This document shows, in pieces, positions 18,435 to 49,348 of a stretch of 64,000 nt of DNA (position 1 is its first letter; every line of letters starts with the position of its first letter). The position numbers were made by a program, and so were the translations under genes. Location: IMG/VR virus record IMGVR_UViG_3300028045_000001, positions 175,961-239,960 of that record, one strand, 5' to 3'. Under the pieces are notes generated by a model. That model was not told where the DNA came from. It saw nothing but the letters and a program-made list of their open reading frames with translations, and ran no database searches.

Positions 18435-18445
18435 GGAGTTTGATT

Positions 18446-24770: not shown

Positions 24771-25415
24771 ATGATTGCGAAGAATGAAAATAAGTACATA
24801 GCTATGCTTTCAATTGCTGGATATGAGGGGTGTCGACTATCTAAATACAAGGACACAAAAGGTTATTGGACAATAGGATTTGGTCACCTTATACTGGAAG
24901 GTGAATCATACAACAAAAAATTATCTTTTTCTGCAGCAGATCATTTGTTTGAACAGGATTTCGAAACATGCATGGAAGCTGCCACATCTGTTCCTAACTA
25001 TAGTGAGCTAAACGATGCCAGAAAGATCGCGATCTTAAACATCGTCTACAATATGGGAGCCCCAGGATTTATAAAGAAATTTCCATCATGCATTAGAGCT
25101 ATAAAAAACCTTAACTTTAAGGAGGCTGCCGCTCAATTACTATGTGGGAGCTCTAAAAATGTTAAAAGTAAGTATTTAAAGGAGGTTGGCCAAAGGGCAT
25201 TGGATGTGGCTAAGTTATTGGAGTCGGGTAAGCTTGAGGATGTGGTCATCAATGAGGTCAACTATGGACCGGATGGCGCTAGGAAATCTAAGTCCTACTT
25301 CTGGGAACATCTGAATGTAAATAAGCCAAAGTACACTGAACGGGTAACTGCGTCGCTTCCAAAGGACCTGTATGTCGCACTGGTTGCAAGTGGAGCAGAT
25401 GTATTAAAAGCATAA
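24771..25415 (+). CDS. Phage lysozyme (GH24, T4-lysozyme-like)
   Basis: YEG...YKDTKGYWTIGFGHL carries the E-x8-D-x5-T catalytic pattern; VYNMG motif. Confidence 0.88.
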   Translation: MIAKNENKYIAMLSIAGYEGCRLSKYKDTKGYWTIGFGHLILEGESYNKKLSFSAADHLFEQDFETCMEAATSVPNYSELNDARKIAILNIVYNMGAPGFIKKFPSCIRAIKNLNFKEAAAQLLCGSSKNVKSKYLKEVGQRALDVAKLLESGKLEDVVINEVNYGPDGARKSKSYFWEHLNVNKPKYTERVTASLPKDLYVALVASGADVLKA

Positions 25416-27323: not shown

Positions 27324-27398
27324 AAAATACAATAATGATATTATATATCAAAAGAATTCTTAAATCAAATGTATAACTTTTTTAATTGAGAGGTTGCA

Positions 27399-32081: not shown

Positions 32082-32118
32082 TACCTTGGCCTTGCCTACT
32101 ATAGGCAAGGCCAAGGTA
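32082..32118. terminator. Perfect inverted repeat, 17-bp stem, 3-nt loop
   Basis: taccttggccttgccta-cta-taggcaaggccaaggta. Confidence 0.65.
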
Positions 32119-32164
32119 ACTAATGAGTTTATCTATCCCATGTGCAATTAAATACATACATTGT

Positions 32165-32177
32165 AATTATATAAACT
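32165..32177 (+). promoter_or_regulatory. Candidate late promoter motif
   Basis: AATTATATAAACT upstream of the fibre cluster. Confidence 0.35.
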
Positions 32178-32247: not shown

Positions 32248-33075
32248 ATGAGTCCTAATTTACCAATAAATGATTATACTATCGCCCAACAACAAGCATT
32301 GGTTAAAGTCAATGCAAAGACACAACTGGCCAATGGTAGCAATAGGACGTTGACTGAGATAAAGTCTGAAGTATTGGATACTAAGACTACATTAGAAAGC
32401 AAGGTCAATGGAATGTCCCCAAGACTCGACAATGTGAATGTAGCCATCCCTAATAAAGTGATCGAATTTGGTGCCCTTATAGCGGAAGAAGAAACATTAT
32501 ACCAGAGCATCTCCCAAGTTGCTACTACAAAATTCACAATGACACTTGACGGCAGTGTTGAAAAATTTTATCCTGTATGGTTTAAGTTTAATTCCGAAAC
32601 CATTAATTTTTTGGAGATATATAGGAATAAGAATCTAAACAGTGAGTTATTTGTTTTAGATAAAACTATACCAAGTGGGTACATATACATTGAAGGATGC
32701 GGGTACGACCCACTTACAGAATTACCCGGTAGACTAACCGTACGGTCATTCAATGAAATCGGAAATAAATGCATGAGTCTACCTAGTCCTAATCTGTATA
32801 GCAGTAGAGAAATTAATTCTGAAAAGGGGTACTACACAGTTGGGATCTCTGGAATTTATCTGCGTGGAGGATTAACCTATAATTTCCGATGTAACGATCT
32901 TGATGTTATACACAATATTGAAACCATATTTAACGATGGAACCAAAGACGCTTACACCATAACTGGCGTGGATGGAGAAGAGTACTATGCAGAAGCTACT
33001 ACAGTCGAAGACTGTGATAAAATAGATTGGGATGCGTCAATAAGCCCATTGTACGGAACCCAACAACAACCATAA
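32248..33075 (+). CDS. Fibre/appendage family protein (coiled coil + FYP/LRGG domain)
   Basis: LDGSVEKFYPVWF...SGIYLRGGLTY. Confidence 0.6.
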   Translation: MSPNLPINDYTIAQQQALVKVNAKTQLANGSNRTLTEIKSEVLDTKTTLESKVNGMSPRLDNVNVAIPNKVIEFGALIAEEETLYQSISQVATTKFTMTLDGSVEKFYPVWFKFNSETINFLEIYRNKNLNSELFVLDKTIPSGYIYIEGCGYDPLTELPGRLTVRSFNEIGNKCMSLPSPNLYSSREINSEKGYYTVGISGIYLRGGLTYNFRCNDLDVIHNIETIFNDGTKDAYTITGVDGEEYYAEATTVEDCDKIDWDASISPLYGTQQQP

Positions 33076-33185
33076 AGCATTTGACTGTTCAACCGGAACT
33101 GATAGTGTGGATTGTAGAAACCTTCTACCGACAATCTGGTGCCATGCTTCGGTATCAAACGCATAAAGATTAAGGGATATTGATT

Positions 33186-34964
33186 ATGAGTGCAAATTTA
33201 TTAACGAGTGAATATATTCGAGCTCAACGAACCAACATAGCTACCGTTGAAGACAAAATACCAAGTGCTGATAAAACTAGGACCGATATATCGGAACGCC
33301 TTGTTGAAGATGCGACTTATGCCACAGAAAAAAATATATTGTTAAATAGTAGAGACGCTAAAAGTACGGAGTTAGAGAACCACAGTAATGATAATAACGA
33401 ACTCCTGACTGAGGCAACTACGACGATAAATTCTAATGATGCGATAGTTAAATATAACTATAAGAATGAAATAGAGTTTGTTGTGAACGGAGAAATAAAT
33501 AAATTCTATCCAGTCTGGTTTCTTACTGGAACAGTAGGGCCGGCACCATCTCAAATATATGGAAGTATTTACATAGACGTTATCCGAACATCTGATATGG
33601 ATAGGCTATTGTTTGCCAATGACCCATCAAAGACTCCGACCGTTTATATGCACATCGATGCTGACAGCACAGATAGATGTAAGAATGTACCAACTGATTT
33701 TAAAGTTAGAAACTACTCTCCTAAACATGTAGAGTGTATCGCTATACCGAATAAAAAGTTATATTGTTCAAAGACACGATTTCCTTGGTTGCCCAAATAC
33801 CAACATCCGGTGTTATCTGGATTCTATGTTAGGGGCGGTATTAAATTTAAAATTTTTACCGATAGTGAGCAAGTTTCTAATGCACTCATAGCCAGAATGG
33901 AGTTACCGGCACTGGATGAGTACAACATTCAATCTTCTGGAGAGGATGACTACTATTGTAGAACTATAAAGGAAGAACACATTACACACATCCCATGGGG
34001 CATATCTGCATATAACTACCCTACGGAATATGCTCCGTTGGTTGGGGATACAGGATTATTGGTTGGTGGCACCTCCGCAGGCGATATTATAACCAGAAAT
34101 GAAATAGGCTATATATCAACTAAAGCCGCTACAATTGGTGCAGGTAACTTAAGTTTCCATATGGTACAACCGGAATGTGCCTCGAACGGTGGGAATGATA
34201 TCTGTGTTACAACTGGGGATGACGACGATAGTCTTGGGAACAGTCACGATGCGCAGTCTATTGTATCGACGGGATCCGACACACTTACGACTGCTGCGAT
34301 GTCTAAAGGCGTTAGTCTCAGTAAAGGAACATCCAACAATGTAAGTGATGTAGCTGTATTTACTGGAGGAGTAGGGTCGGGTGTACCCCTAACTGATATA
34401 CGGAGGGTTGCAGTACCGACTGTGGCCGAACATGCAGTTGTCGGTAATTTATTGGGAGCCGTAGTTGGCCATGTGTGTGATTCTAATGGGACACTTGATC
34501 AGGCAGTAGTAGTTGGGGGACATGAACTCGATGGAACACAATCCTCGATAGTGCAACAGTTCATTATTTCAACTGGATCGAACTCTGCGAAGACAGCTGA
34601 CCTGACAACGTATACCAAGTATGGAGAGTCCACCTCAATTGGTAATAGCGTAGGCGACCAAATTACAATTGCTGGTGGAAAAGATATGGAAAATGGGGAT
34701 GTTGTTATCCCACACATATACAGTTCTGTTGTGTCAACAGGAGCGGATGTAAATACGACGAGTGACCTTTCTATAGCTACGGCTACAACTGGAGGTACCT
34801 CAAATGGCACAGGTGATATTGGAACTATATATGGAGTTGGAGGAGATGGCGGGGTTATGTCAGACGAGTTACAGCAACTTGTTGTCTCTACCGGAACCTA
34901 TAGTTCGCAAACTAACAACGTTGCGACTGCTTCCATTTTAAATGGCGCTGCATCTAATGCATAG
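33186..34964 (+). CDS. Fibre/appendage family protein (coiled coil + FYP/LRGG domain + Kelch-like repeats)
   Basis: VNGEINKFYPVWF...FYVRGG, then repeated (I/V)STG...SNG..D....GG units. Confidence 0.65.
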   Translation: MSANLLTSEYIRAQRTNIATVEDKIPSADKTRTDISERLVEDATYATEKNILLNSRDAKSTELENHSNDNNELLTEATTTINSNDAIVKYNYKNEIEFVVNGEINKFYPVWFLTGTVGPAPSQIYGSIYIDVIRTSDMDRLLFANDPSKTPTVYMHIDADSTDRCKNVPTDFKVRNYSPKHVECIAIPNKKLYCSKTRFPWLPKYQHPVLSGFYVRGGIKFKIFTDSEQVSNALIARMELPALDEYNIQSSGEDDYYCRTIKEEHITHIPWGISAYNYPTEYAPLVGDTGLLVGGTSAGDIITRNEIGYISTKAATIGAGNLSFHMVQPECASNGGNDICVTTGDDDDSLGNSHDAQSIVSTGSDTLTTAAMSKGVSLSKGTSNNVSDVAVFTGGVGSGVPLTDIRRVAVPTVAEHAVVGNLLGAVVGHVCDSNGTLDQAVVVGGHELDGTQSSIVQQFIISTGSNSAKTADLTTYTKYGESTSIGNSVGDQITIAGGKDMENGDVVIPHIYSSVVSTGADVNTTSDLSIATATTGGTSNGTGDIGTIYGVGGDGGVMSDELQQLVVSTGTYSSQTNNVATASILNGAASNA

Positions 34965-34978
34965 GGAGATATTTTGTA

Positions 34979-37900
34979 ATGAGTGATAAAAAAATAATAA
35001 TCGGGGATAAAACTATATCCGACATATCAGATGACATTTCAATATCCAACAGCGATAGTACCATATTGGCATCTGGCAAAGCGTATGATTCTGTTTATAA
35101 AGAATTGACCAGTATTATCCAAGGTACGAAACAAGGCCAAATAACTGCACTTAATCAGAGACTAATAGAAGCACTCGATGCATTACAAGAAATAATCGAT
35201 GAGAATAATGATAGTTTATTTGATATCCAAGATGACGATCTGTCTGCATTGAGAACTGTTCTTGAAAGAGGAAACCTGATACGAGCAGATATTGTGAATA
35301 GTGGCATACAATATGAACTCACTGAAACCGGACATGACGTCAATGAATACGCCATAGACTGCTTAGAGCAATTTGTAGCGGGTTTAATTACAGACACCGG
35401 ACACTCTGCCATAGTAACCGTCGGCGGTGATGCTACTAAATTTTACCCCATTGTTTGGCCATTTCCAACTGGTTATGTTGGCACTGTTCGGATTGAGCGA
35501 GATAACACTCTGCCAACTGGTCACTCCGACCTAAGTATGTCGTTGTTCTTTAAGTGTTATGGATTTGGTTCGGGTGTAGATGTGAATGAATCACATGAGT
35601 TCAGAATAACTGACTTTACTGAGGCGAATGGAATATCCCTTAGGCTCGCAAGTCAGGATGTGTTCAATACTCCAAGCGGACTAGATCCAGTGAAACATGG
35701 CACTTACTCCTGCCCTATTGGAAACTGTGTGTTTTTAAGAGGGAATACGCAATACAAAATAACATGCAGCGATGTAGCTATACTGGCAGCTATCCAAGTT
35801 TCAGCCGATAACGTCGTGTCGAATTCCTTGCATGAAATAAACGGATACACTTACAATGTATCATGCATAGATGAGTCTATTATAACTAATATAATTAGTG
35901 ACGAGCGATTAAAATGGCTATTCCGTCAGCAGCATGTTATTAATACTAATAAGGTCAATGCTGTAACAGGTATGAATGTCCCAGTCGACTCAACTACTGG
36001 GAATTATTCAATAACATGGGGTACAACGAGTACTGCGGACGCAGAGTATGTTCTCGAACAAGCAACAGATTCTAATTTTTCAGATACTGTCGAATTGTAC
36101 AGTGGCCCGAATAGACAATTGGAGTTCATCGACCATGGTCCAGGGATTTTCTACTATAGAGTTAAAGCTATCAAATCTGGCTTAGCTGGAAGTGATTGGG
36201 TAGTTGGATCCGACACATGCTCTGTTGTTAAGTATCTATCTCGACCAACGGGCCTCACTGTTCCTGAGATGAGTACAAACGATGGCGAATTCACTGCGAA
36301 TTGGGCAGGCACATTACCAGTTAATGCAGAATACGTTCTTGAGTATGCCTTACAACACCAGTACTTGGATGCAGTTTCGATATACCAAGGGACAGATACA
36401 AGTAAACAATTTGTACATCTGGAACTTCCCCAAGATAGGTATTATTTTAGAGTTAAGATTATTAAAGAGAACTATACGGATAGTAGTTACTTCGGCGGAA
36501 CTACATGCTTAGTCATTATAGTTGCACATGCACCAGATTCAGTTAGCGTACCAGATGAAAATGAGTCTGGTTCTTTTACTACCACTTGGGCTCCAACAAC
36601 AACGGCGGATGGTAGCTATATACTTGAACGAGCTACTGAATCCGACTTCAGTGATGCGACTCAGTTCCCAATTACTACGAACCAGTATGACAATATCGAC
36701 CTACTAACGGATACGTATTATTTTCGTGTAAAGACGGTATGTGTTGGCATGACGGATAGTGATTGGGTGGAATCAATTCCATGTGTTGTTACAAGAACCA
36801 TTGTCAAGCCCTCAGAGTTCATCGTGCCGTCCGATAATTCGACTGGGGATTTCATGGTACGTTGGACCCGCTCACCTGAAAGCGACGTTACCTATATTGT
36901 TCAGTATTCAAATGATTCTGACTTCGGGGATGATGCTATAGTTGAAATACAGACTACTGGCACTACCCATAGCTACACCGACATATACCCAGATGTGCTA
37001 TATTTTAGAATAAAGGCTATTAAGGATAACATGTACGATAGCCCATGGGAAGGTGGATCTACCAGTATAACTGTAACAAGAACAGTAGAGACTCCAATGG
37101 ATATCGTTGTTCCATCAGACAACAGTGATGGGACTTACACTATCAGTTGGACTGCTACAGAGACGCCTGAGGTCATGTATACACTTGAAGAGTTTACAGA
37201 CAGTGACTCTCCTGATAGCACTGTTACAAGAAGCATCGATTGCACTGACGCGTTCTTTACCTTTTTGGAACAAGTTCCCGGAACATACTACTACAGAGTA
37301 CGTGCCAGTAAAGAACCAGATTGGTATCATAGTGACTGGGGAACAGGGGAAACTGGATGTGAGGTCGAACGAACTGTAGAGCTTCCGTCATTAACAGTCC
37401 CACCAAACGACCATGATGGGGATGGTGTATTTAATATAGTTATAGGTCCATCTGAAACTGCAGGTGCGTCATATGTAATTGAAGTCACTGCAACTGATGG
37501 CTTCTCTGATGAAATCAATGTAGCAGCCGGCTCCTCGCTGACTATTGCAATGTTGGATTTGGATCCAGACATTTATTCTTTTAAAATCATGGCTACGAAA
37601 CCGGAATGGGAGAATAGTGATTGGGTAGATGGTAGTGATCCATGCGACGTTCGAAGAATTATAGAGCCTCCAACAAATTTTATTGTTACTGATTCTAATC
37701 TTACTGGGGATCTTACCGTAGCTTGGACAGCTTCTCCAGAAGAAGATGTCGCATATGTTCTTCAGCGTGCCACAGATGATTTATTCCCAACAGAATCTAC
37801 ACTTGAAGTGCAAGTAACAGGTACTTCATATAGTTACACAGATGTCCAACCAGGAGAACATTATTTTAGGGTCAAGGCCACCAAGTCTGAATGGAGGGAT

Positions 37901-40072
37901 AGCGATTGGGCGATCGGTAGTTGCGAAGTGAACAGGCAACCTGCCCCACCAATAAGCCTATCGGTTCCAAGCAACTCTCCAATTGACACTGTTGGTTTAG
38001 TGGAACTGACTATAGTGCCGCCTTCTGTCGCTAGTGACATTAGCAACTATGTTATCGAACGATCTACTCAATCAACCTTCGATCCATCGGATACAGTTGA
38101 AGTGTATTCTGGTTCTGGACTCAATCCAACCATCACTGAAACCATGCCAGGCACATATTGGTACCGAGTTAGAGCCATAGGATTAGATCCAGCTACTTGG
38201 GATCCGAGTCCTTGGACAGTTGGCGGTAGTTGCGAGGTAGAAATAAAAGTTGCAAAACCAAGTTCATTAACTGTGCCTGAAACTAACGACGACGGATCGC
38301 CGGTCTTAAATATAGTTGCATCTAGTTCCAATGTAACTTATGTGGTAAACCGCGCAAGAGCATCGAATTTTTCAGATGCAACTGAAATTTATAGGGGAGG
38401 GGGATTAGTTGTCATTGGCGGATCCAACTTGAATCCAGGTACTTACTACTACCAAGTCCGAGCTATTAGGAATAATTGGAAAGACAGTGACTGGACTAAT
38501 TCACATATCTCATGTGTGGTGAGTAGGACTGTCGTCAACCCAACGGGATTAACCGTGCCGCCAAACAGCGCTGGAGGAAATATAGCCTTGACAATAGGTG
38601 CATCTTCTACGCAAGGCTGCGTGTATGTCGTAGAAAGAGCCCTTAATCAAAGTTTTACACAGGGAAGACAGACTGTCTACACTGGCCAAACGCCATCCTG
38701 TTCGGCTCCTGTAGGAGGGGTTCCAAATAGGTATTATTTTAGAGTTAGGGGAATTAAAACGAACAATTGGAAAAGTAGTGCTTGGGTACCTGGCAATACC
38801 TCTTGCTTGATTACACCAAAGTTGAGAAATCCAACATATTTATCTATACCGCCAAGGTCTGTAAAGGACGCTCTTATGCCGGTAGTTATAGGGGCATCTC
38901 CAGATGCACCAGATTATTATGGAATATACATGTCCCGCTACAGTGACATGGCTAATCAATATCAAGTGTATCAAGGCCCTGCTCAAAATCCTAAAATTAC
39001 TATAGGTTCAGTTATTGGGGCATCGTATTTTCGAGTTAAAGCGTTTAAATCACAATGGGCCAGTAGCGATTATGTGGGAGGCAATAGGCCGACCAATAGC
39101 CTACGATATGGCGACGATGGTATGTTTACGGGAGGAACACAAGATAATGCTTATTTAGATAGTGCCCATAACGTAAAGATATCTACCGGCGCTATATCTT
39201 TTAATAGCGGCAACGTCACCAAGAGATCATATCATGGCATGGCATCCGACAGTCACAATGATAATTACATAGTACACGCAGGCCGCAAAGGACCAGATAG
39301 TGGAGACTTGCTCCAAAGTTCTGTCTATGGCAATGTATCGACAAGTAGTGTTGCAACAGTAGGAGGTGTTATTTCAACATGTCGCCTTTCCCTTTATTTA
39401 GATAATGACGTTGAAGGCCAATATGTTGTACTTGGTGGCTATAAGTCCAGTGGCAATAGGGATGTCTTAAAGGGCCACATATCCACTAGGCAAGAGACAC
39501 TTTCTGCGGTCGGCGACAATACTGCCGTATATGGTTCTGTTGGAGGAAATAAGGAGGATGTAGGATTCTTTATCCCGGGAGCATTCTCTTGGACCAGTTC
39601 CGGTAACTATCGAAGAAGCGTATTGGATGCGAGTGCGCATTTCATTATTTCTACTGAAGTAAGAAGTGAAACCACTGAAAGTATTTCTACAAGACACTTC
39701 TCTAGTTCCGTAGATAATAATAGTGGCGATACCATGATAGTTGTCAATGGGAGAAGATACCTTAAGTGGACAATATACGGGCCGAACAATAGATTGCGCT
39801 CTTATTACTACGAGGATGATATTACTTCAAATGATAAATATATCATGTCGACTGGAGTGCTATCTATGGGCGTCAGCGATTTATCAGAACCTTATGGGAT
39901 CGGCGGCTGTCAAAGCGGAGCAAATAACTCTATTAATTCCGAAGGGGTCATAATGGGAGGTAATGCCTCTGTAACAAAAATAACAATTGACACAAATGCT
40001 ACAGCCACAGATATTGGTTCTTTGCCAAATCCAAATGTGCTCATGAATCCTGCCGCAACCAGCAATGGGTAA
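34979..40072 (+). CDS. Large fibre/adhesin: N-terminal module, coiled coil, FYP domain, 11 FN3 repeats, C-terminal Kelch-like repeats
   Basis: Repeated VP...W....Y.LE.A....F......Y.G........YY(Y/F)RV(K/R)A......S.W units; C-terminal ISTG/SNG repeats. Confidence 0.8.
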   Translation: MSDKKIIIGDKTISDISDDISISNSDSTILASGKAYDSVYKELTSIIQGTKQGQITALNQRLIEALDALQEIIDENNDSLFDIQDDDLSALRTVLERGNLIRADIVNSGIQYELTETGHDVNEYAIDCLEQFVAGLITDTGHSAIVTVGGDATKFYPIVWPFPTGYVGTVRIERDNTLPTGHSDLSMSLFFKCYGFGSGVDVNESHEFRITDFTEANGISLRLASQDVFNTPSGLDPVKHGTYSCPIGNCVFLRGNTQYKITCSDVAILAAIQVSADNVVSNSLHEINGYTYNVSCIDESIITNIISDERLKWLFRQQHVINTNKVNAVTGMNVPVDSTTGNYSITWGTTSTADAEYVLEQATDSNFSDTVELYSGPNRQLEFIDHGPGIFYYRVKAIKSGLAGSDWVVGSDTCSVVKYLSRPTGLTVPEMSTNDGEFTANWAGTLPVNAEYVLEYALQHQYLDAVSIYQGTDTSKQFVHLELPQDRYYFRVKIIKENYTDSSYFGGTTCLVIIVAHAPDSVSVPDENESGSFTTTWAPTTTADGSYILERATESDFSDATQFPITTNQYDNIDLLTDTYYFRVKTVCVGMTDSDWVESIPCVVTRTIVKPSEFIVPSDNSTGDFMVRWTRSPESDVTYIVQYSNDSDFGDDAIVEIQTTGTTHSYTDIYPDVLYFRIKAIKDNMYDSPWEGGSTSITVTRTVETPMDIVVPSDNSDGTYTISWTATETPEVMYTLEEFTDSDSPDSTVTRSIDCTDAFFTFLEQVPGTYYYRVRASKEPDWYHSDWGTGETGCEVERTVELPSLTVPPNDHDGDGVFNIVIGPSETAGASYVIEVTATDGFSDEINVAAGSSLTIAMLDLDPDIYSFKIMATKPEWENSDWVDGSDPCDVRRIIEPPTNFIVTDSNLTGDLTVAWTASPEEDVAYVLQRATDDLFPTESTLEVQVTGTSYSYTDVQPGEHYFRVKATKSEWRDSDWAIGSCEVNRQPAPPISLSVPSNSPIDTVGLVELTIVPPSVASDISNYVIERSTQSTFDPSDTVEVYSGSGLNPTITETMPGTYWYRVRAIGLDPATWDPSPWTVGGSCEVEIKVAKPSSLTVPETNDDGSPVLNIVASSSNVTYVVNRARASNFSDATEIYRGGGLVVIGGSNLNPGTYYYQVRAIRNNWKDSDWTNSHISCVVSRTVVNPTGLTVPPNSAGGNIALTIGASSTQGCVYVVERALNQSFTQGRQTVYTGQTPSCSAPVGGVPNRYYFRVRGIKTNNWKSSAWVPGNTSCLITPKLRNPTYLSIPPRSVKDALMPVVIGASPDAPDYYGIYMSRYSDMANQYQVYQGPAQNPKITIGSVIGASYFRVKAFKSQWASSDYVGGNRPTNSLRYGDDGMFTGGTQDNAYLDSAHNVKISTGAISFNSGNVTKRSYHGMASDSHNDNYIVHAGRKGPDSGDLLQSSVYGNVSTSSVATVGGVISTCRLSLYLDNDVEGQYVVLGGYKSSGNRDVLKGHISTRQETLSAVGDNTAVYGSVGGNKEDVGFFIPGAFSWTSSGNYRRSVLDASAHFIISTEVRSETTESISTRHFSSSVDNNSGDTMIVVNGRRYLKWTIYGPNNRLRSYYYEDDITSNDKYIMSTGVLSMGVSDLSEPYGIGGCQSGANNSINSEGVIMGGNASVTKITIDTNATATDIGSLPNPNVLMNPAATSNG

Positions 40073-40111
40073 TCGGTACAACTGTATTTAAAGTTAAATT
40101 ATTTTTACATC

Positions 40112-40145
40112 ATGAGGAAGTTCTCCTGTAGGAGAACTTCCTCAT
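40112..40145. terminator. Perfect inverted repeat, 16-bp stem, 2-nt loop
   Basis: atgaggaagttctcct-gt-aggagaacttcctcat. Confidence 0.65.
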
Positions 40146-40160
40146 TAATAATGTTTTAAG

Positions 40161-40175
40161 ATATTATATACAACT
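40161..40175 (+). promoter_or_regulatory. Candidate late promoter motif
   Basis: ATATTATATACAACT. Confidence 0.4.
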
Positions 40176-40211
40176 AATTCAATATTATTAAGTTATCTAT
40201 GAGGTGAGATT

Positions 40212-42950: not shown

Positions 42951-42962
42951 TAAAAAGCAAGC

Positions 42963-42996
42963 CATATGTCCCTTCTCATATGAGAAGGGACATATG
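42963..42996. repeat. Perfect 34-bp palindrome, no spacer
   Basis: catatgtcccttctcat|atgagaagggacatatg. Confidence 0.9.
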
Positions 42997-42997
42997 A

Positions 42998-43010
42998 ATA
43001 TTATATAACT
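42998..43010 (+). promoter_or_regulatory. Candidate late promoter motif
   Basis: ATATTATATAACT immediately after the palindrome. Confidence 0.45.
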
Positions 43011-43049
43011 AAAAAAAGACAAATCCTTAAAATAAGAGAAGGTGAGAGT

Positions 43050-43871
43050 ATGGCTAATGGCGATGTAACTGATGCGCAGATGGATATGAAGGACGAACTC
43101 GAGGATACAAAACTCGGGCAGGATATTTCGATAGAGTATACTGTCCAGAGAGTCGATAGTCTTAACGCGGACGTCCCAACTAAAATCGAAGGTGTGTCCG
43201 ACATAGTCAATTCTACAAATGCAAGCATTATAAATTTGGAAGCGACCTTTAATAACTATACCACTAATTATTTAAATCGCATCAATAGATTACCTATAAT
43301 CCAGACCGCGTACGATAATTACGAACACAGACTATGGCGATTAACTTTCCTACTGCACGGGACTATTTCTAACTTCTATCCTATTCGCCTCAAGCTCAAT
43401 GGTGATGTGCTAAAAAAATTCTCTATATATAGGAATAAAAATCAGGAGACAGCAGCATTCGTGGCATTGGGTATACCAAGTGGCGGAGTCCGACTAAACG
43501 CACATACTATTGGAAACAGTAACTCAGACGGAAATAGAGTTTTTAGGATTTTAAATTATGAGGAAGAGGGGTCTAAGTGCATCGGGGCGATAGGGTTAGA
43601 TTTATATGGATCAGTATCTGGAGAAGACCCAGGTTATGATTGTAACTCTCATGCTGGGCTATATTTACGAGGTGGGATAAGCTACACTCTTGAAACCAAT
43701 GATCGGGAACTGATGAATGATCTTCAGGATTTTTTGGAGTACGCCGGATCTACTGATCCATGGATAATTGGGGACTTTATAGCAACAGCACTAACCCTTG
43801 AAGAAATTTCTTTACTGGATAATGACCCGAGATTAAATCTTAACTACCTTGAGGGCAGGGGTGGGATATAA
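43050..43871 (+). CDS. Fibre/appendage family protein (coiled coil + FYP/LRGG domain)
   Basis: LHGTISNFYPIRL...GLYLRGGISY. Confidence 0.6.
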   Translation: MANGDVTDAQMDMKDELEDTKLGQDISIEYTVQRVDSLNADVPTKIEGVSDIVNSTNASIINLEATFNNYTTNYLNRINRLPIIQTAYDNYEHRLWRLTFLLHGTISNFYPIRLKLNGDVLKKFSIYRNKNQETAAFVALGIPSGGVRLNAHTIGNSNSDGNRVFRILNYEEEGSKCIGAIGLDLYGSVSGEDPGYDCNSHAGLYLRGGISYTLETNDRELMNDLQDFLEYAGSTDPWIIGDFIATALTLEEISLLDNDPRLNLNYLEGRGGI

Positions 43872-43909
43872 GCCTTATATCCTTATTTGAACAACGAAGG
43901 AATAAAATC

Positions 43910-44692
43910 ATGACAGAGTTCGCAACTGATGTACAAATGACTTTAAAGCAGTCTACGGATGCGCAACGTGAAGAACAACATCCAACAATAATTGCAAACC
44001 GTGAGGTCATTAACGAGATAGACACGGTCTCCTTTATAATAGGAAAAGTAAATGTTGTCAACCTTGTTGATGACCGAGTCACCGTAACCGAAGAAACCCT
44101 ACAAGCATTGATTGATAACTATGCTGTAGATTATTCTGATTATCGATCAAAATTAAATTCATTCAAGACTTCTGATATGGGATTGATAGAATATAAGTTC
44201 ACTATGTTCGGAGACATAAATAATTTTTATCCACTCCCATTTAAATTTAACAGCGACATAGTTAAACGGTTTTCTATATACAGAGGGATTCATGATGACT
44301 CATCTACATTCACCGCAAATGGGAAACAGCCCAGTGGAGGACTGATCCAACTAACTGGCTCTAATGCCATATTTAGAATAAATGCCTACTCTAACGTTGG
44401 AGACATATGCATGCAGCTCCTTAATCAGCGACTGTACTCCTCATACAATGGGGACCCTGAGACATTTAGTTGTAGCGAGACTAATGGGGTGTACCTTAGG
44501 GGAGGAATAAGTTACACAATAGTTGCCGATTCATTTAGCATGATCTCAGACATAACTGCCCACATATCCATGGGACTCCAACCGAATTGGGCATGGGGAC
44601 TACATGTGGCAGAATCTATACCTGACACCAACATAGAAAGTATAGAACAATCTAATGTATATGAGAATGACAATCATCTGGAAGGCAGGTAA
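43910..44692 (+). CDS. Fibre/appendage family protein (coiled coil + FYP/LRGG domain)
   Basis: MFGDINNFYPLPF...GVYLRGGISY. Confidence 0.6.
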   Translation: MTEFATDVQMTLKQSTDAQREEQHPTIIANREVINEIDTVSFIIGKVNVVNLVDDRVTVTEETLQALIDNYAVDYSDYRSKLNSFKTSDMGLIEYKFTMFGDINNFYPLPFKFNSDIVKRFSIYRGIHDDSSTFTANGKQPSGGLIQLTGSNAIFRINAYSNVGDICMQLLNQRLYSSYNGDPETFSCSETNGVYLRGGISYTIVADSFSMISDITAHISMGLQPNWAWGLHVAESIPDTNIESIEQSNVYENDNHLEGR

Positions 44693-44710
44693 TACCTCCA
44701 CATAATATAC

Positions 44711-44752
44711 TTCTATGGCCCACTCCTTTTATAAAAGGAGTGGGCCATAGAA
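44711..44752. repeat. Perfect 42-bp palindrome, no spacer
   Basis: ttctatggcccactcctttta|taaaaggagtgggccatagaa. Confidence 0.9.
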
Positions 44753-44761
44753 TACTATAGG

Positions 44762-44774
44762 CTATTATATAACT
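44762..44774 (+). promoter_or_regulatory. Candidate late promoter motif
   Basis: CTATTATATAACT. Confidence 0.45.
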
Positions 44775-44804
44775 AAACAAACTTTTCATTACAGGTGATA
44801 AACT

Positions 44805-46664
44805 ATGTCTGATAAAAATGTACTGATAGAAGATAAAATAATAAAGGGTATATCGGACGAATGTCCAGAAACGGATGGGTCAGAAAATATACTGGTATCT
44901 ACAAAAGGACTGTACGATCTAAGGCAAGAACTGTTGGCCCAAATTATAGCGGCCGATGGTAACATAATTGAAGTGGTTAACAACGAACTAATAGTTGCCT
45001 TGACTAAACAACTAGGAATCATAAACTCTAATTCCCAGCTAATAGCTGAGATAGATACCATCATTGACACAGGCTTCGATGACATAGAGAACTCGGTTTC
45101 AGTCATAGAAGGAGAGGTGACTACAGTAAATGAGAATATGATTGAGTTAGAAGAGAAAAGTGCACAGTCCACTACTAATTTAAATAATCTAAATTCGGCC
45201 CTGGCCCGTATGGAAGTTCGCGATTTTGTCAGCATAACAATAGATGGCGATGATGACAAATTTTATCCGGTATACTGGAAATTTGACAATCACGAACCCT
45301 GCACTATAGTCATCAAAAGGGACGGTGCTGGGGAAAGTAACAGGGGAGTATATATAGAACTGGTCGGTATTGGAGGTAACGTCAAAGAAGAGTATGCCAG
45401 ATCATTATTCATAAAAGAGTTCACCGATAAGGGCGGGATCAGTGCAAAATTATTAAGTTTAAATATGTACTCATTTGAGGGCACCGGCAATCAGGGAAAC
45501 TCTGATTTTATAGCACATTGTGCAAGTGGACTGTATCTTAGGGGTGCGGCAACATATCAATTATATTGTGAGCTACAGTCAATACGAGTCGCTATACAAA
45601 GCCAAGTTATGGATGGGGTAGCTAGTGTAAAATCTGTAAGTGAGAACAGTCGAACGTACATGATGATCCCCATATCTGAATCTGACATGGTGGCGCTACC
45701 ATCTGATCCAGCACTGCGATTTGAAAATTCCATAAACAAATACATCATGCCTGGCGACATAGCGGTTCACCATGGTGGACAATATACATTTAACTCTGAT
45801 TTAACTCAAACAAATAGTATCCACCAATCATCTGTGTCTACTGGCGCTGCTGCTGTCATCACAGGAACCTTGCCGATTGCTTTATGGGGCATGGTGGCAA
45901 CATCAAATAGTTCCGGAGACATTGCACTCTCCGCAAGCGGTGAATCGGACATAACTTCCTTCGCATTTAAATATAAGTCCATTATATCTACTGGTGGAGA
46001 TGCCATACCTCTGATTTCTTTGGCTAACCCACAAAAAAACATGGCATCAACTTCCAATGGGTATAAGGACATGGCCTGCTTCATTGGAGGTGGGTCCGAT
46101 GGAAACTATTCAAGTTCCATTGAAAAAAATATAATTTCAACGGATGTCGTTGTGACAACTACGCCACAGATGGCAGTAGCAACTGGGAATAGTGGCGCAA
46201 CCTCTAACTTGATCTACGATACTGGAATATTGGTAGGTGGACAAGTTGACAACGGTAACAGTATGGCAGTGTTGACCGACGCCATACATCAATTTGTTGT
46301 ATCCAATGATGTAGATTCCATTGTAACAGGCGCACTAAATATATCCTGCGACGGTGGGCGGCTTGTTTCAAATGGCATCGCTGATACTTGTCTGGATGTA
46401 GAGGGATCCCCCGTTGTAGAGTATGCTAGAACTATCATCATATCTACCGCAGCTAACTCCGTACTCTCCGGGAGCATAAATACATACGGTTATAAATCAG
46501 CATCCCAAGCATCGAATTCAGTTGGGGATAGGGCAGTCTACGCTGGTGGGGACGCATACACTGACACCATAAGACAGTATGTTATTTCCACCCCATCGTG
46601 CGCACTTGCACCAGGGGCACTAACAGAATCATTACGAGCTGCTGCCGGTACATCCAATGGATAG
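44805..46664 (+). CDS. Fibre/appendage family protein (N-terminal module, coiled coil, FYP domain, Kelch-like repeats)
   Basis: IDGDDDKFYPVYW...GLYLRGAATY, then six to seven IST.../SNG..D....GG units. Confidence 0.68.
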   Translation: MSDKNVLIEDKIIKGISDECPETDGSENILVSTKGLYDLRQELLAQIIAADGNIIEVVNNELIVALTKQLGIINSNSQLIAEIDTIIDTGFDDIENSVSVIEGEVTTVNENMIELEEKSAQSTTNLNNLNSALARMEVRDFVSITIDGDDDKFYPVYWKFDNHEPCTIVIKRDGAGESNRGVYIELVGIGGNVKEEYARSLFIKEFTDKGGISAKLLSLNMYSFEGTGNQGNSDFIAHCASGLYLRGAATYQLYCELQSIRVAIQSQVMDGVASVKSVSENSRTYMMIPISESDMVALPSDPALRFENSINKYIMPGDIAVHHGGQYTFNSDLTQTNSIHQSSVSTGAAAVITGTLPIALWGMVATSNSSGDIALSASGESDITSFAFKYKSIISTGGDAIPLISLANPQKNMASTSNGYKDMACFIGGGSDGNYSSSIEKNIISTDVVVTTTPQMAVATGNSGATSNLIYDTGILVGGQVDNGNSMAVLTDAIHQFVVSNDVDSIVTGALNISCDGGRLVSNGIADTCLDVEGSPVVEYARTIIISTAANSVLSGSINTYGYKSASQASNSVGDRAVYAGGDAYTDTIRQYVISTPSCALAPGALTESLRAAAGTSNG

Positions 46665-46693
46665 TGACAATATATAAATATATAAATGCATAG

Positions 46694-47455
46694 ATGTATA
46701 GCGAGGTAACTATGACGACACCAATGAAATTTAAAACGACATTGAAACAAGCTTTAATTTCATCTAAAGAGCTACATAGGAATAGCAAGAGATTATATAA
46801 AAAACATAGCTCGCTTCAAGGTAATCAGCGGGCCACATCTATTCAGTTGCGAACACAGAATGAACTGCACAAAAACTCTATCGATTTAATCAAGGCGAAG
46901 CTATCTTACGCTAAGTCAATGATCGATCGTATCGACTCAGATAAACTAAAGAATGCGGATGCCCTATCTTTTATAAGACCAAAGGAAGTTACTTTCATGG
47001 TGAGTGGAGATGAGAACACATTCTATCCAATCATGTGGGACTTTCCAAACGACACCGACTCCGTCATTATAATAGCACGTGATGCGAGTAATGTACACTG
47101 TAGTACTGCGCCTTCGCGTGTACCAAGATTGTTTTTCAGGATGGTGTCAGGATCGATTCCAATAGATGGAGTCCGTTACTGTGCGGATGTGGATATGTTT
47201 GTACAGGATGGGGATGAGGTATTATTACACCCCTCCAATCAAATGCTATCGTCACTAAATGATCCGAAAGCTGAGAAGCACCACCATTGTCCAACTAAGT
47301 GTGGGTGCTTTCTTAAGGGTGGCACAGAATACAGATTGCTTTATAGCACAAAGTCGGTAAAGGATCAAATATTGCACTGGGCCGAAAACACTGTCGATGA
47401 GACAATGCTCACTTCAGGCGACGATAAGTATTTTGTACATTCTATAGTTAGCTAA
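46694..47455 (+). CDS. Fibre/appendage family protein (coiled coil + FYP domain)
   Basis: VSGDENTFYPIMW...GCFLKGGTEY. Confidence 0.6.
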   Translation: MYSEVTMTTPMKFKTTLKQALISSKELHRNSKRLYKKHSSLQGNQRATSIQLRTQNELHKNSIDLIKAKLSYAKSMIDRIDSDKLKNADALSFIRPKEVTFMVSGDENTFYPIMWDFPNDTDSVIIIARDASNVHCSTAPSRVPRLFFRMVSGSIPIDGVRYCADVDMFVQDGDEVLLHPSNQMLSSLNDPKAEKHHHCPTKCGCFLKGGTEYRLLYSTKSVKDQILHWAENTVDETMLTSGDDKYFVHSIVS

Positions 47456-47485
47456 TATAAATCAACACATGAGGAAACTACTGTA

Positions 47486-47659
47486 ATGAGCAATAAGCAA
47501 ATCCAAGTAGGTAAAACTATAGTCGTTGGTCTGATGGGAGAGTACGACGAAACCAATGTCCACAGTGGCACTGTTATAACCCAAGCGGATCTTACGGAGT
47601 TGGCCACAAAAATGAAGAACGCTATCCAAGATGCGATAGAATCAGACTCGGGGGATTAA
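47486..47659 (+). CDS. 57-aa orphan N-terminal fibre module
   Basis: ATG 47486 to TAA 47659 (MSNKQIQVGKTIVVGLMGEYDETNVHSGTVITQADLTELATKM...), resembling the N-termini of the 34979, 44805 and 47664 proteins. Confidence 0.6.
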   Translation: MSNKQIQVGKTIVVGLMGEYDETNVHSGTVITQADLTELATKMKNAIQDAIESDSGD

Positions 47660-47663
47660 GGAT

Positions 47664-48572
47664 ATGGCTGACATCAAGGTACTGATTGATGGTGTTAAAA
47701 TAACTAAAGTTGTAAATGAGTACAATCCAAATTTAGCTCCATCTGAGAAAACCGTAGTGTCGCAAAGCATAATACCACAAATGTACGACATGGTTCGAGA
47801 TGGATTGGCGATAGGAGAGGATGATGCTTCTGTGCAAGAATTACTGTCTGCATCTAATGCGGAATTAGATGCGGCAGAAGTGACCATGAAATTCACTGGG
47901 GATAATATCGACCTACATAATGACTATGCCGATATCATCACTACGGTAGAGGAGATGGAAATAGTAAATGCTCAGGCTCTCGCCGCCGTTACAGCTGCGG
48001 AAGCCGCCGCCACTGCAGCCCAAGCAGAGTTATATGCTGTACCAAAAGTTCATGAAAGAACCTATCGCTTGGGAGGCAGTGACAAGTGTTTCTATCCAAT
48101 CTGGTTTGTTTCCCATCCAACTGAGTTACATACATTAATAGTATCTAATGCGGAGTTGCTGTGTGAAATAGATATCATAGGTGGAGGCGATGAAAATTTA
48201 AATGTTAGAGCTATGCATATAACTTCTATCACACAGGACCCAGAAAACAAATTACTATTGTTGCCAGGAGTGAGCATGTATAGTCGTAAGGGCAATTCCG
48301 CGTATGGGTATTCGTGTTCGAACAGGCACGGCATCTATCTTAGAGGAGGGAGATCCTACACGGTTCAGTCATACTACAAAACAATGATAGATGAGCTGGC
48401 TGCTCCATTTGTAATTGGAACTGTCGATAGTTCGGTGGAGCAGGATACATCAGCTATCGAAGAAACCTTCCATTTGGTGTTTGATTCCATCAGGTATACA
48501 ATGAAAAAACTCACTGAAACCGAGGTTGACGCGATACCTATCGATCTGAGGGTTTCTGGGGCAACGGTATAA
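47664..48572 (+). CDS. Fibre/appendage family protein (N-terminal module, Ala-rich coil, FYP domain)
   Basis: LGGSDKCFYPIWF...GIYLRGGRSY. Confidence 0.6.
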   Translation: MADIKVLIDGVKITKVVNEYNPNLAPSEKTVVSQSIIPQMYDMVRDGLAIGEDDASVQELLSASNAELDAAEVTMKFTGDNIDLHNDYADIITTVEEMEIVNAQALAAVTAAEAAATAAQAELYAVPKVHERTYRLGGSDKCFYPIWFVSHPTELHTLIVSNAELLCEIDIIGGGDENLNVRAMHITSITQDPENKLLLLPGVSMYSRKGNSAYGYSCSNRHGIYLRGGRSYTVQSYYKTMIDELAAPFVIGTVDSSVEQDTSAIEETFHLVFDSIRYTMKKLTETEVDAIPIDLRVSGATV

Positions 48573-48589
48573 AAGGGATAGAAAATATC

Positions 48590-49348
48590 ATGATTGAAGA
48601 AATGGATAAGTCAACAAATGCGGATAGGTTGATTCTACGCGATCGTGTGGTTGATATGAGACGAACACTAAAAGAAAAACACACCGCATATATCAGCTTG
48701 AAAAATAATCAACAGAAGGTTAGAAACTTAGCCACTCATAAATTGAGTCAAATTAGCAATGCTATATCTGACTCCAATAAGCACATAGATGCCACTTCAA
48801 CTGCTTTGGCTACTGCTACTCAGATACAATCGGGGTTCCATGGAGCACTGGTTAAAAATAAACATCGGGTGAGACAGCAAGTTATACTCCCCTTAACCGG
48901 GGAGCCTGATAAGTTTTATCCAATCATACTAACGGGAATCGACGAATGTAAAATTAGGTTTTCTATAGCTACCGGCCACAGTCAAGATGATTACCTTATT
49001 GAAAAAATCTCTATCCTCGGCTCAAATAGCGGTAGCTCTATATGTGAGTTGAAAGAGGAGTTTCTTAGTGCTAAAGGGAAGAGATATATTTGCCTCTTGA
49101 ATACTAAAATGTGGTGTGAGTTGAATGGACACCCTGCATCCTTTAGTTGTCTACATCATCAAGGATTTTATTTAAGAGGAGGTACAACTTATACAGTTTG
49201 TTCAGATCATCAAGATATACTAACTAAATTAATAATTAACTTTAGTCGACCTATGTCTGATACATACACACTCACTAATAAATCCGATACTATGATCTTT
49301 AGATCAATACGTGATACAGAACTTATTCAAACATTAGATCGAATGTAA
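48590..49348 (+). CDS. Fibre/appendage family protein (coiled coil + FYP domain)
   Basis: LTGEPDKFYPIIL...GFYLRGGTTY. Confidence 0.6.
   Translation: MIEEMDKSTNADRLILRDRVVDMRRTLKEKHTAYISLKNNQQKVRNLATHKLSQISNAISDSNKHIDATSTALATATQIQSGFHGALVKNKHRVRQQVILPLTGEPDKFYPIILTGIDECKIRFSIATGHSQDDYLIEKISILGSNSGSSICELKEEFLSAKGKRYICLLNTKMWCELNGHPASFSCLHHQGFYLRGGTTYTVCSDHQDILTKLIINFSRPMSDTYTLTNKSDTMIFRSIRDTELIQTLDRM

What the first reader, a model, noticed from the sequence alone, without database searches (positions are those of the whole stretch)
32248..49348. Ten-member fibre family sharing one FYP...LRGG domain as a modular adaptor
Seen in sequence: all ten long ORFs have a coiled-coil stalk followed by a domain bounded by G-x3-4-F(Y/F)P(V/I/L/M) and (Y/F/W)(L/V)(R/K)G(G/A/N). 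Six stop there, at 252-302 aa. Four extend with FN3 arrays and/or Kelch-like repeats. Inference: a combinatorial appendage kit, possibly heterotrimers of short and long chains, that gives broad or switchable receptor binding.
Basis: partly seen in the sequence, partly recalled or inferred. Interest (0 to 1): 0.65.

Follow-up and report, generated by a model that had tools for sequence, protein, structure and literature searches.

The report
Ten-gene tail-fibre paralog array
A marine phiKZ-like giant phage carries ten neighbouring genes for fibre-type virion proteins that share one helix-plus-beta-sandwich module, also found inside P2-type tail fibres, and four of them add distal propeller or FN3 parts, so this is most likely a multi-fibre host-recognition kit of a known general kind built from an uncharacterised domain.

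Summary
Ten consecutive + strand ORFs (32248-49348) each carry both motifs 87-112 aa apart. No other ORF in six frames of the window has either motif, and the 240-kb genome has exactly ten copies.

The motifs lie in one confidently predicted ~170-aa beta-sandwich (pLDDT 96.5) after a long N-terminal helix. Six proteins end 0-6 residues after it. F2, F3 and F7 add a six-repeat Kelch-like propeller. F3 adds 11 FN3-like repeats and F4 adds 7.

The domain has no Pfam model and no significant solved-structure match. It equals phrog_10758 (unknown function) and has 116 representatives among 1.84 billion proteins. Outside giant phages it sits inside, or directly after, P2/HP1-type gpH tail fibres, so a tail-fibre role is well supported.

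A related 221-kb phage contig has 12 copies at the same position. Orthologous N-terminal modules there carry different C-terminal parts, which shows modularity. It is not the phiKZ gp131 family or DUF7941.

Heterotrimers remain untested. Genetic switching is not supported: no invertase, reverse transcriptase or long repeats. I rate it a new variant of a known kind, of moderate interest.

The parts
32248..33075 (+). F1, 275 aa, class A short member: helix 7-89 plus shared domain aa 85-269
33180..34964 (+). F2, 594 aa (TTG start; ATG two codons later gives 592 aa): class A module (domain aa 87-280) plus six-repeat Kelch-like propeller aa 280-594 (nt 34017-34961)
34979..40072 (+). F3, 1697 aa: class B module (extra ~45-aa N-terminal segment; domain aa 138-315), 11 FN3-like repeats aa 323-1373 (nt 35945-39097), six-repeat propeller aa ~1374-1697 (nt 39098-40069)
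40212..42950 (+). F4, 912 aa: class A module (domain aa 93-274) plus 7 FN3-like repeats aa 257-908 (nt 40980-42935)
43050..43871 (+). F5, 273 aa, class A short member (domain aa 87-267)
43910..44692 (+). F6, 260 aa, class A short member (domain aa 86-255)
44805..46664 (+). F7, 619 aa: class B module (domain aa 132-309) plus six-repeat Kelch-like propeller aa 301-619 (nt 45705-46661)
46694..47455 (+). F8, 253 aa, class A short member (domain aa 88-253)
47664..48572 (+). F9, 302 aa, class B short member (domain aa 122-301)
48590..49348 (+). F10, 252 aa, class A short member (domain aa 87-251)
47486..47659 (+). 57-aa ORF in the F8-F9 gap that weakly resembles the class B N-terminal segment; possible stand-alone or remnant anchor peptide (uncertain)
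32084..32176 (+). Intergenic cassette before F1: perfect hairpin 32084-32116, then AATTATATAAAC at 32165-32176; candidate terminator/processing site plus phage promoter
40114..40174 (+). Intergenic cassette F3-F4: hairpin 40114-40143, then ATATTATATACAAC at 40161-40174
42963..43009 (+). Intergenic cassette F4-F5: hairpin 42963-42996, then ATATTATATAAC at 42998-43009
44711..44773 (+). Intergenic cassette F6-F7: 42-nt perfect palindrome 44711-44752, then CTATTATATAAC at 44762-44773

Best explanation
The ten genes encode a paralogous set of tail-fibre-type virion appendage proteins of an uncultivated marine phiKZ-like jumbo phage.

Each protein starts with a conserved assembly module. This is a long N-terminal helix, with an extra ~45-aa N-terminal segment in class B (F3, F7, F9), followed by a ~170-aa beta-sandwich 'knob' that holds the FYP and LRGG motifs.

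My reading is that this module fixes each paralog to its own slot in the baseplate-peripheral fibre apparatus, or to a partner chain. Whatever follows it points outward. In F2, F3 and F7 that is a six-bladed Kelch-like propeller. In F3 and F4 it is an FN3 array acting as a spacer, and in the six short members nothing follows. The propellers, and possibly the knob itself, contact the host surface. Together the virion would display several different fibres.

Shown here: the family, the common predicted fold, its presence in bona fide P2-type tail fibres, conservation of the array and of orthologous slots in a second phage, and swapping of the C-terminal modules.

Inferred: virion location, oligomeric state, which parts bind receptor, and the attachment site.
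For: Family and fold:
- Motifs occur only in these ten ORFs, and the genome has ten copies.
- AF2 models are confident: full F1 pLDDT 93.8 and the domain alone 96.5 with pTM 0.91.

Tail-fibre link:
- The word search found one outsider, in an E. coli P2-like prophage. It lies between a 173-aa Phage_tail_fib stub and DUF4376.
- The profile search found 116 representatives, several named tail fiber or phage tail protein in Xenorhabdus.
- P0030 is the gpH-position fibre of a P2-like tail cluster, with the domain at aa 436-596.
- The Vibrio HP1-like prophage homologue follows the 'probable tail fiber' gene.
- BFVD gives 16 hits at E<=1e-3, led by tail-fibre and S74-chaperone proteins at TMq 0.57-0.64.

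Array conservation:
- Contig JAAEOX010000219.1 has vRNAP, a small ORF, 12 family genes and ThyX in the same order as the window.
- A third lineage has at least 6 consecutive members with RCC1-type propellers.

Slots and modularity:
- The tree gives well-supported cross-phage pairs: F3-M4, F4-M5, F2-M3 and F7-(M8,M9). C-terminal parts differ within pairs.

Context:
- Tail genes lie just upstream: a gp181-like 2086-aa protein, a lysozyme and a gp182-like protein.
- The phiKZ fibre families are reduced or absent. There is one gp131-N-like domain in the genome and no DUF7941, with a positive control in phiKZ.
Against: - There is no experimental or proteomic evidence that any of the ten is in the virion.
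- The array lies between the virion RNAP gene and nucleotide-metabolism genes. It is not beside the sheath, tube and baseplate genes at genome 76-85 kb.
- The trimer prediction gave no verdict.
- The N-terminal helices are polar, with weak heptad periodicity.
- Six of the ten have no distal module, which is unusual for independent receptor-binding fibres.
- The fold has no significant solved relative, so its role is argued from context only.
Confidence: 0.6

Rival explanations
1. Hetero-oligomeric fibres. Class B chains (F3, F7, F9) co-assemble through their helices with specific class A chains into mixed trimers, or into six-helix bundles like the phiKZ gp131x3+gp133+gp134+gp135 fibre base. 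Short chains would then serve as structural partners of long chains. This refines the best explanation and is.
For: - There are two discrete N-terminal length classes, at ratios 3:7 here and 4:8 in the related phage.
- Class A/class B gene pairs are adjacent, tightly spaced (14-30 nt) and orthologous between the two phages: F2-F3 with M3-M4, F7-F8 with M9-M10, and F9-F10 with M11-M12 (the F9/F10 with M11/M12 and F8 with M10 pairings rest on long branches that the tree tool flagged).
- Most orthogroups are retained in both phages, which argues for non-redundant roles.
- There is a precedent for a hetero-hexameric fibre base made of paralogs in phiKZ (PMC13250141).
Against: - No interaction test succeeded (one search gave no verdict).
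- Nearly all characterised phage fibres are homotrimers (general knowledge).
- Adjacency and tight spacing are also expected for any co-expressed structural genes.
- Four class A members (F1, F4, F5, F6) have no adjacent class B partner.
Confidence: 0.25
2. The beta-sandwich knob is itself the receptor-binding (lectin-like) head. The six short proteins are then complete short fibres, and the array is ten independent receptor-binding proteins rather than one adaptor with optional tips.
For: - In the split P2/HP1-like fibres the helix-plus-knob protein is the last fibre piece. Only small accessory ORFs follow it.
- P0059 carries the domain at its extreme C-terminus.
- The weak solved-structure matches are C-terminal beta-sandwich domains of tailspikes.
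Against: - The most conserved residues (G, FYP, LRGG, Y) are invariant across very different phages and hosts. That suits a structural or assembly role better than diversifying receptor contact.
- In gpH-type fibres and in F2, F3, F4 and F7 the domain is internal and is followed by other distal modules.
Confidence: 0.3
3. A self-polymerising filament system analogous to the Goslar DUF7941 'fibre cloud'. Abundant short members would chain head-to-tail, and a few long members would add host-recognition domains.
For: - The family layout is strikingly parallel. Goslar has ten DUF7941 proteins, three of them extended with host-recognition domains (preprint 10.64898/2026.04.21.720040).
- This genome lacks DUF7941, while phiKZ has three members and lacks the FYP/LRGG domain.
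Against: - There is no sequence relation to PF25613.
- The module architecture differs: helix plus beta-sandwich here, against globular domain, disordered linker and globular domain in DUF7941.
- The domain's other homes are ordinary gpH-type fibres.
- No evidence of polymerisation was obtained.
Confidence: 0.1
4. Virion decoration not involved in adsorption (head, neck or sheath whiskers), or non-virion proteins.
For: - The array is not next to the baseplate and sheath genes.
- FN3/Ig-like arrays also occur on decoration proteins (general knowledge).
- Some giant phages have hairy tails (PMC5259590, title and abstract seen).
Against: Every informative homologue context is a tail-fibre position. 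Structural neighbours are tail fibres.
Confidence: 0.1

Closest known systems
P2/HP1-type gpH tail fibres and their split variants (Xenorhabdus P0030, P0117 and P0040; E. coli P0002; Vibrio cyclitrophicus prophage elements)
   Same: They contain the very same domain (profile E 1e-15 to 1e-37). In the split variants a short N-terminal helix precedes it, as in the window's short members.
   Different: They are single-copy per tail cluster. The domain is attached to, or follows, the Phage_tail_fib baseplate-binding N-terminus, which none of F1-F10 has. There is no array, and the distal tips differ (Gp10_C, Gp53-like_C, Collar/S_tail_recep_bd).
phiKZ gp131-gp135 paralogous fibre proteins (PMC13250141)
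   Same: This is a block of adjacent paralogs in a phiKZ-like phage that share an N-terminal module. Only some carry a C-terminal beta-propeller, and helices bundle at the fibre base. They are proposed to form twelve peripheral fibres for adsorption.
   Different: There is no sequence relation: phmmer finds nothing, the PHROGs differ (13857 and 2163 against 10758), and the A4 profile finds nothing in phiKZ. The order of parts is reversed: domain then helix in gp131, helix then domain here. The gp131 propeller has seven blades, while these have six ~50-aa repeats. The copy number is ten to twelve rather than five.
Chimallivirus DUF7941 (PF25613) family, Goslar 'fibre cloud' (bioRxiv 10.64898/2026.04.21.720040)
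   Same: It is a ten-member family with a shared N-terminal module. A minority of members are extended by host-recognition domains and many are short. It is proposed to sit on the peripheral baseplate.
   Different: There is no Pfam hit to PF25613 in F1-F10 or anywhere in the genome. The predicted fold and architecture differ. The FYP/LRGG domain is not restricted to giant phages.
Branched multi-receptor-binding-protein systems (e.g. the hyperbranched fibres of Klebsiella jumbo phage PhiKp24, PMC9700779 as cited in PMC13250141; CBA120-type tailspike sets, from my own knowledge)
   Same: Many receptor-binding proteins are encoded in a row, with conserved N-terminal anchoring modules and variable distal parts.
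   Different: Those use T4 gp10-like anchor domains and enzymatic beta-helix tailspikes. Here the anchor is a helix plus a beta-sandwich with no significant match among solved structures, and the distal parts are Kelch-like propellers and FN3 arrays. I did not compare them directly.
T4 gp9/gp10 baseplate-fibre connectors
   Same: There is weak fold resemblance: Foldseek prob 0.99 but E 0.023 and TM 0.37 to 1qex, and an Atlas gp9/10-N cluster at TM 0.45. Gp9 also has an N-terminal coiled coil followed by beta-sandwich domains.
   Different: The scores are below significance. There is no sequence similarity, and membership is not supported.

Membership tests
phrog_10758 (unknown function) | Match to the PHROG profile | tested here: met
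   All ten proteins hit it, with E from 2.5e-9 (F7) to 1.8e-3 (F2). Several hits cover only part of the profile.
FYP/LRGG beta-sandwich domain family (defined here, alignments A2 and A4) | ~170-aa domain with G-x3-4-F/Y-Y-P near its start and Y-L-R-G-G ~100 aa later; one predicted fold | tested here: met
   All ten score 86-145 bits against the 92-row profile. The AF2 model has pLDDT 96.5. P and G are invariant across 92 sequences.
P2 gpH-type tail fibre | N-terminal Phage_tail_fib (PF12571) baseplate-binding domain and Phage_fiber_2 repeat | tested here: not met
   No Pfam hit in F1-F10 at E<=0.1. The relatives P0030, P0117, P0040 and P0058 do have them. Only the internal domain is shared.
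phiKZ gp131-like fibre paralogs (phrog_13857 / phrog_2163) | gp131-like N-terminal domain | tested here: not met
   No phmmer hit either way. F1-F10 do not hit these PHROGs. The only gp131-N-like domain in the genome is in the 630-aa ORF at window 7636-9528.
phiKZ gp131-like fibre paralogs | C-terminal seven-bladed propeller of gp131 | tested here: inconclusive
   F2, F3 and F7 have six repeats. There is no sequence hit to gp131 or to any PDB chain. No structural comparison with 4GBF was possible.
DUF7941 (PF25613) | Match to the Pfam model | tested here: not met
   No hit in F1-F10 or in the genome. The same search finds three copies in phiKZ.
Kelch-repeat beta-propeller | Six ~50-aa blades with the Kelch sequence signature (PF01344) and propeller fold | tested here: inconclusive
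   Six ~50-aa repeats with GG doublets. No Pfam Kelch hit at E<=0.05. The ESM Atlas model of F2 aa 286-594 superposes on Kelch proteins at TM 0.83-0.85 and on viral clusters at up to 0.89, but the whole-protein model has low confidence (pLDDT 0.53).
Fibronectin type III | Match to PF00041 and ~95-aa tandem repeats | tested here: met
   F3 hits fn3 at E 1.2e-5, 25.8 bits against a cut-off of 25. F4 hits the FN3-bearing regions of phrog_31 and phrog_23968. An iterated repeat profile finds 11 units in F3 and 7 in F4, each E<=1e-16.
T4 gp9/gp10-like connector | Fold match to gp9/gp10 domains | tested here: inconclusive
   Foldseek 1qex E 0.023, TMq 0.37. Atlas T4_gp9_10_N cluster TM 0.45.
Chimalliviridae (context of the genome) | Chimallin nuclear-shell protein | tested here: inconclusive
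   The split virion and non-virion RNAP subunits are present. phiKZ gp54 and PhuZ give no phmmer hit. phrog_4795 gives no hit, and I ran no positive control for it.

The most novel reading that the evidence does not exclude
The array encodes a combinatorial, hetero-oligomeric fibre system. Class B chains would pair with specific class A neighbours through their long helices, for example as mixed trimers or six-helix bundles. 'Blank' short chains and long chains bearing a propeller or FN3 array would then co-assemble into a fixed set of asymmetric fibres. This system would replace both the gp131-type fibres and the DUF7941 filaments of cultured phiKZ-like phages. It would be a previously undescribed assembly principle for a domain also used in ordinary P2-type fibres.
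Probability: 0.2. Interest if true: 0.75.

Novelty: new variant of a known kind. Interest (0 to 1): 0.5.

Why it matters
Host recognition by giant phiKZ-like phages is only now being resolved, through the 2026 structures of phiKZ and Goslar. In both, the outermost fibres are the least understood part.

This locus shows that an uncultivated marine lineage uses a different building block, repeated ten to twelve times. The block is a helix plus a beta-sandwich that has no Pfam model and no solved structure. The usual gp131 and DUF7941 families are reduced or absent.

The same domain sits in P2/HP1-type tail fibres of E. coli, Xenorhabdus and Vibrio prophages, which are genetically tractable. Its role as assembly adaptor or receptor binder can therefore be tested directly.

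The conserved 'slots' with swapped distal modules give a natural data set on how fibre kits evolve host range. The array as a whole belongs to a known general kind, the multi-paralog fibre set.

Tried and rejected
- Megablast of the array and tblastn of F6 against 50,697 phage records found nothing.
With the vRNAP C-terminus it found no close relative in IMG/VR.
- Sequence searches of PDB with F7, the domain profile A4 and the propeller profile A5 gave no meaningful hit.
- The fold search with the full-length F1 model was swamped by coiled-coil matches to the N-terminal helix, so I folded the domain alone.
- Complex prediction with three copies of F1 returned 'no answer' (score 0.00, controls not run). 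This is neither evidence for nor against trimerisation.
- The heptad-periodicity test of the N-terminal helices was significant only for F7.
- I looked for switching machinery and found none. There are no long direct or inverted repeats between paralogs, no RVT_1 and no resolvase or invertase in the genome.
- Sigma-70-like promoters are not enriched. The ATTATATAAC motif is not enriched window-wide (17 found against 15 expected), although it recurs after hairpins inside the array.
- Contigs of three seawater runs laid on 43050-48900 showed no variants, so they gave no microdiversity information and no RNA evidence.
- I considered and rejected membership in the phiKZ gp131 family and in DUF7941.
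- The domain profile found nothing in phiKZ or in five other cultured phiKZ-like phages: Vibrio sm033 and BONAISHI, Xanthomonas RTH11, Aeromonas AhC3_1 and a Salmonella Seoulvirus. The positive control on the own genome is.

Full report
**What is there**

The window is the last 64 kb of a 239,960-bp virus record with direct terminal repeats, judged complete. It is a phiKZ-like giant phage. It encodes split multisubunit RNA polymerase subunits, including a 1365-aa virion RNAP subunit at 27399-31496. It also encodes a gp181-like 2086-aa tail protein, a lysozyme and a gp182-like protein just upstream of the finding. Its RNAP is only about 27% identical to that of any cultured phage. Seawater metagenomes from three studies hold the sequence.

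Between 32248 and 49348 lie ten consecutive + strand ORFs, which I call F1-F10: 275, 594, 1697, 912, 273, 260, 619, 253, 302 and 252 aa.

**Check of the observation**

- Each ORF has exactly one copy of each motif, 87-112 aa apart. In a six-frame scan of the whole window the motifs occur nowhere else.
- The ten are linked by pairwise phmmer hits. They align with invariant G, F, P and G, and all hit phrog_10758, a family of unknown function.
- Profile searches find exactly ten copies in the genome.
- AlphaFold2 with a 92-row alignment gives a very confident model of F1 (pLDDT 93.8). Residues 7-89 form one long helix, followed by a beta-rich domain at 94-258. The domain alone reaches pLDDT 96.5 and pTM 0.91.
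- The FYP motif sits on the second strand. LRGG sits in a turn about 50 residues before the domain's end. With the structural boundary, the six short proteins stop 0-6 residues after the domain.
- F3 has 11 and F4 has 7 FN3-like repeats (Pfam fn3 on F3).
- F2, F3 and F7 end in six ~50-aa repeats. These have no Pfam or PDB sequence match. The ESM Atlas model of the F2 repeats superposes on Kelch propellers at TM 0.83-0.89.
Two refinements apply: LRGG is not the domain boundary, and 'coiled coil' is an inference from a predicted helix with weak heptad periodicity.

**What the shared domain is**

Among predicted viral structures it has 16 matches at E<=1e-3. The top matches are tail-fibre proteins, including an S74-chaperone fibre of a crAss-like phage and the Aeromonas phage Ah1 tail fibre (TMq 0.57-0.64). 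The ESM Atlas gives TM 0.60-0.66 to unnamed clusters and to an S74 cluster.

A profile search of 1.84 billion representative proteins finds only 116 members, 64 of them at E<=1e-10. Their architectures vary:
- after a 50-140-aa helix in 230-300-aa proteins;
- in the middle of long proteins;
- at the C-terminus (P0059, after RCC1 repeats);
- in tandem (two copies in Xenorhabdus P0006 and P0007, four in P0064).

It is thus a real, autonomous and rare domain.

**Why I call it a tail-fibre module**

- The only outsider found by the word search (P0002, E. coli) lies in a P2-like prophage. It comes directly after baseplate J, gpI and a 173-aa Phage_tail_fib stub, and before DUF4376.
- Xenorhabdus relatives are named tail fiber or phage tail protein.
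- P0030 is the gpH-position gene of a P2-like tail cluster. It has Phage_tail_fib at 1-149, Phage_fiber_2 at 169-210, the domain at 436-596 and a Gp10_C tip at 635-809.
- In Vibrio cyclitrophicus HP1-like prophage elements the homologue follows the 'probable tail fiber' gene.
- Every informative context is therefore a tail-fibre position. The domain is either fused into the fibre or encoded as a separate helix-plus-knob piece after the proximal fibre part.

**Comparative evidence on how the array is organised**

A 221-kb contig filed under an alphaproteobacterial MAG (JAAEOX010000219.1) has the same local order as the window: virion RNAP, a small ORF, then twelve consecutive family genes, then thymidylate synthase. 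A third lineage of metagenomic contigs has at least six consecutive members, several with RCC1-type propellers.

A maximum-likelihood tree of the N-terminal modules gives well-supported cross-phage pairs:
- F3-M4, F4-M5, F2-M3 and F7-(M8,M9) are well supported;
- F1 groups with M1 and M2 inside a well-supported five-member clade that also holds F2-M3;
- F8-M10, (F5,F6)-(M6,M7) and F9/F10/M11/M12 are looser groups. The tool flagged the long-branch ones as uncertain.

So the paralogs are old and most slots are retained. Within slots the C-terminal part differs. F1 is short but M1 and M2 carry propellers. F3 has eleven FN3 repeats and a propeller but M4 is short. F4 has FN3 only, while M5 ends in a propeller.

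There are two classes of N-terminus. In class A the domain starts near residue 85-95 (F1, F2, F4, F5, F6, F8, F10). Class B has an extra conserved ~45-aa N-terminal segment (F3, F7, F9; four of twelve in the relative). Three class A/class B gene pairs are adjacent, tightly spaced and apparently orthologous between the phages; two of the pairings rest on the flagged long-branch groups.

**Relation to known giant-phage fibre systems**

- phiKZ builds twelve peripheral fibres from the paralogs gp131 and gp133-135, which share an N-terminal domain and form a six-helix bundle. Only gp131 has the seven-bladed propeller (PMC13250141).
- Goslar has ten DUF7941 proteins. Three are extended by host-recognition domains, and they are proposed to form a fibre cloud (bioRxiv 10.64898/2026.04.21.720040).
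- The present family resembles both in layout but belongs to neither. There are no phmmer or PHROG links to gp131-135. There is no PF25613 hit in the ten proteins or in the genome, while the same search finds three copies in phiKZ.
- Conversely, the domain profile finds nothing in phiKZ or in five other cultured phiKZ-like phages.
- The genome keeps only one gp131-N-like domain, inside a 630-aa ORF at 7636-9528. It has no detectable gp130 (no positive control run).
- I infer that this lineage replaced most of the usual outer fibre proteins with the FYP/LRGG family.

**Mechanism**

The best-supported reading (confidence 0.6) has three parts:
- The helix-plus-knob module is the conserved proximal or assembly part that gives each paralog its slot.
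- FN3 arrays act as spacers.
- The Kelch-like propellers, and perhaps the knob itself, contact the host surface.

The virion would therefore carry several different fibres.

Open alternatives:
- Chains may assemble as homotrimers or as specific class A/class B hetero-oligomers. The one complex job gave no verdict.
- The knob may be the binding head of the six short proteins.
- The proteins may polymerise like DUF7941.
- They may decorate another part of the virion.

Genetic 'switching' is not supported. There are no long repeats or inversions in the array, and no reverse transcriptase or invertase in the genome. Four intergenic gaps each hold a perfect hairpin followed by an ATTATATAAC-like motif. 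This suggests four transcription units: F1-F3, F4, F5-F6 and F7-F10.

**Verdict**

The domain is uncharacterised. It has a PHROG of unknown function, no Pfam model and no solved structure. The ten-to-twelve-gene arrays in marine phiKZ-like phages appear undescribed in the papers and collections I could search. The general kind, a paralogous fibre kit with a shared anchoring module, is known. I rate it a new variant of a known kind, with interest 0.5.

Noticed in passing
window 7636-9528 (+), 630 aa: This ORF holds the only gp131-N-like domain in the genome (aa 154-259; hits phrog_2163 at E 5.8e-12 and phrog_13857 at E 2.9e-10). The domain is internal rather than N-terminal. It could be the docking hub for the FYP/LRGG fibres.
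   Followed up: partly
window 47486-47659 (+): A 57-aa ORF in the 208-nt F8-F9 gap weakly resembles the conserved class B N-terminal segment (MS-x-K-x-I...). It may be a stand-alone anchor peptide or a remnant of an eleventh member.
   Followed up: partly
window 32084-32176, 40114-40174, 42963-43009, 44711-44773: Four intergenic cassettes each hold a perfect GC-rich hairpin followed 2-50 nt later by an ATTATATAAC-like motif. The motif is not enriched window-wide, but its position after hairpins recurs. A similar ATTATATATC lies at 27340, before the vRNAP gene. These are candidate terminator plus phage-RNAP promoter units.
   Followed up: partly
window 18440-24700 and 24771-25415 (+): The gp181-like giant tail protein (2086 aa, TTG start) is followed by a separate 214-aa lysozyme-type ORF (phrog_7, phrog_13211). 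phiKZ annotates gp181 as one tail-associated endolysin, so the lytic part may be split off here.
   Followed up: no
whole genome G000 (window = 175961-239960): No homologue of chimallin (phiKZ gp54, phrog_4795) or PhuZ was detected by phmmer or profile search, although the split virion and non-virion RNAP set is present. Sheath, tube, gp128, gp129 and gp139 homologues lie at genome 76-85 kb. I ran no positive control for phrog_4795.
   Followed up: partly
window 11379-12164 (+), 261 aa: An HNH-endonuclease-type ORF made of about five repeated short motifs (phrog_5351, five stretches) sits among small ORFs of unknown function.
   Followed up: no
L013 10738-12185 (Xenorhabdus P2-like tail cluster): Downstream of the gpH-type fibre that contains the domain lie inverted Caudo_TAP and gp37_C/Gp34_trimer genes. 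This is the layout of an invertible alternative fibre tip. Switching may therefore exist in the P2-like relatives, though not in the giant phage.
   Followed up: no
L015 9630-12164 (P0059, 836-838 aa): One member of the third-lineage array has the reverse architecture: an N-terminal RCC1-type propeller and a C-terminal FYP/LRGG domain. Xenorhabdus fibres P0006 and P0007 carry two tandem copies, and P0064 carries four.
   Followed up: partly
window 43050-48900 in run X3: A seawater metagenome from a different study holds low-depth contig pieces identical to the window. The phage therefore recurs in the sea, and no strain variation was visible.
   Followed up: yes
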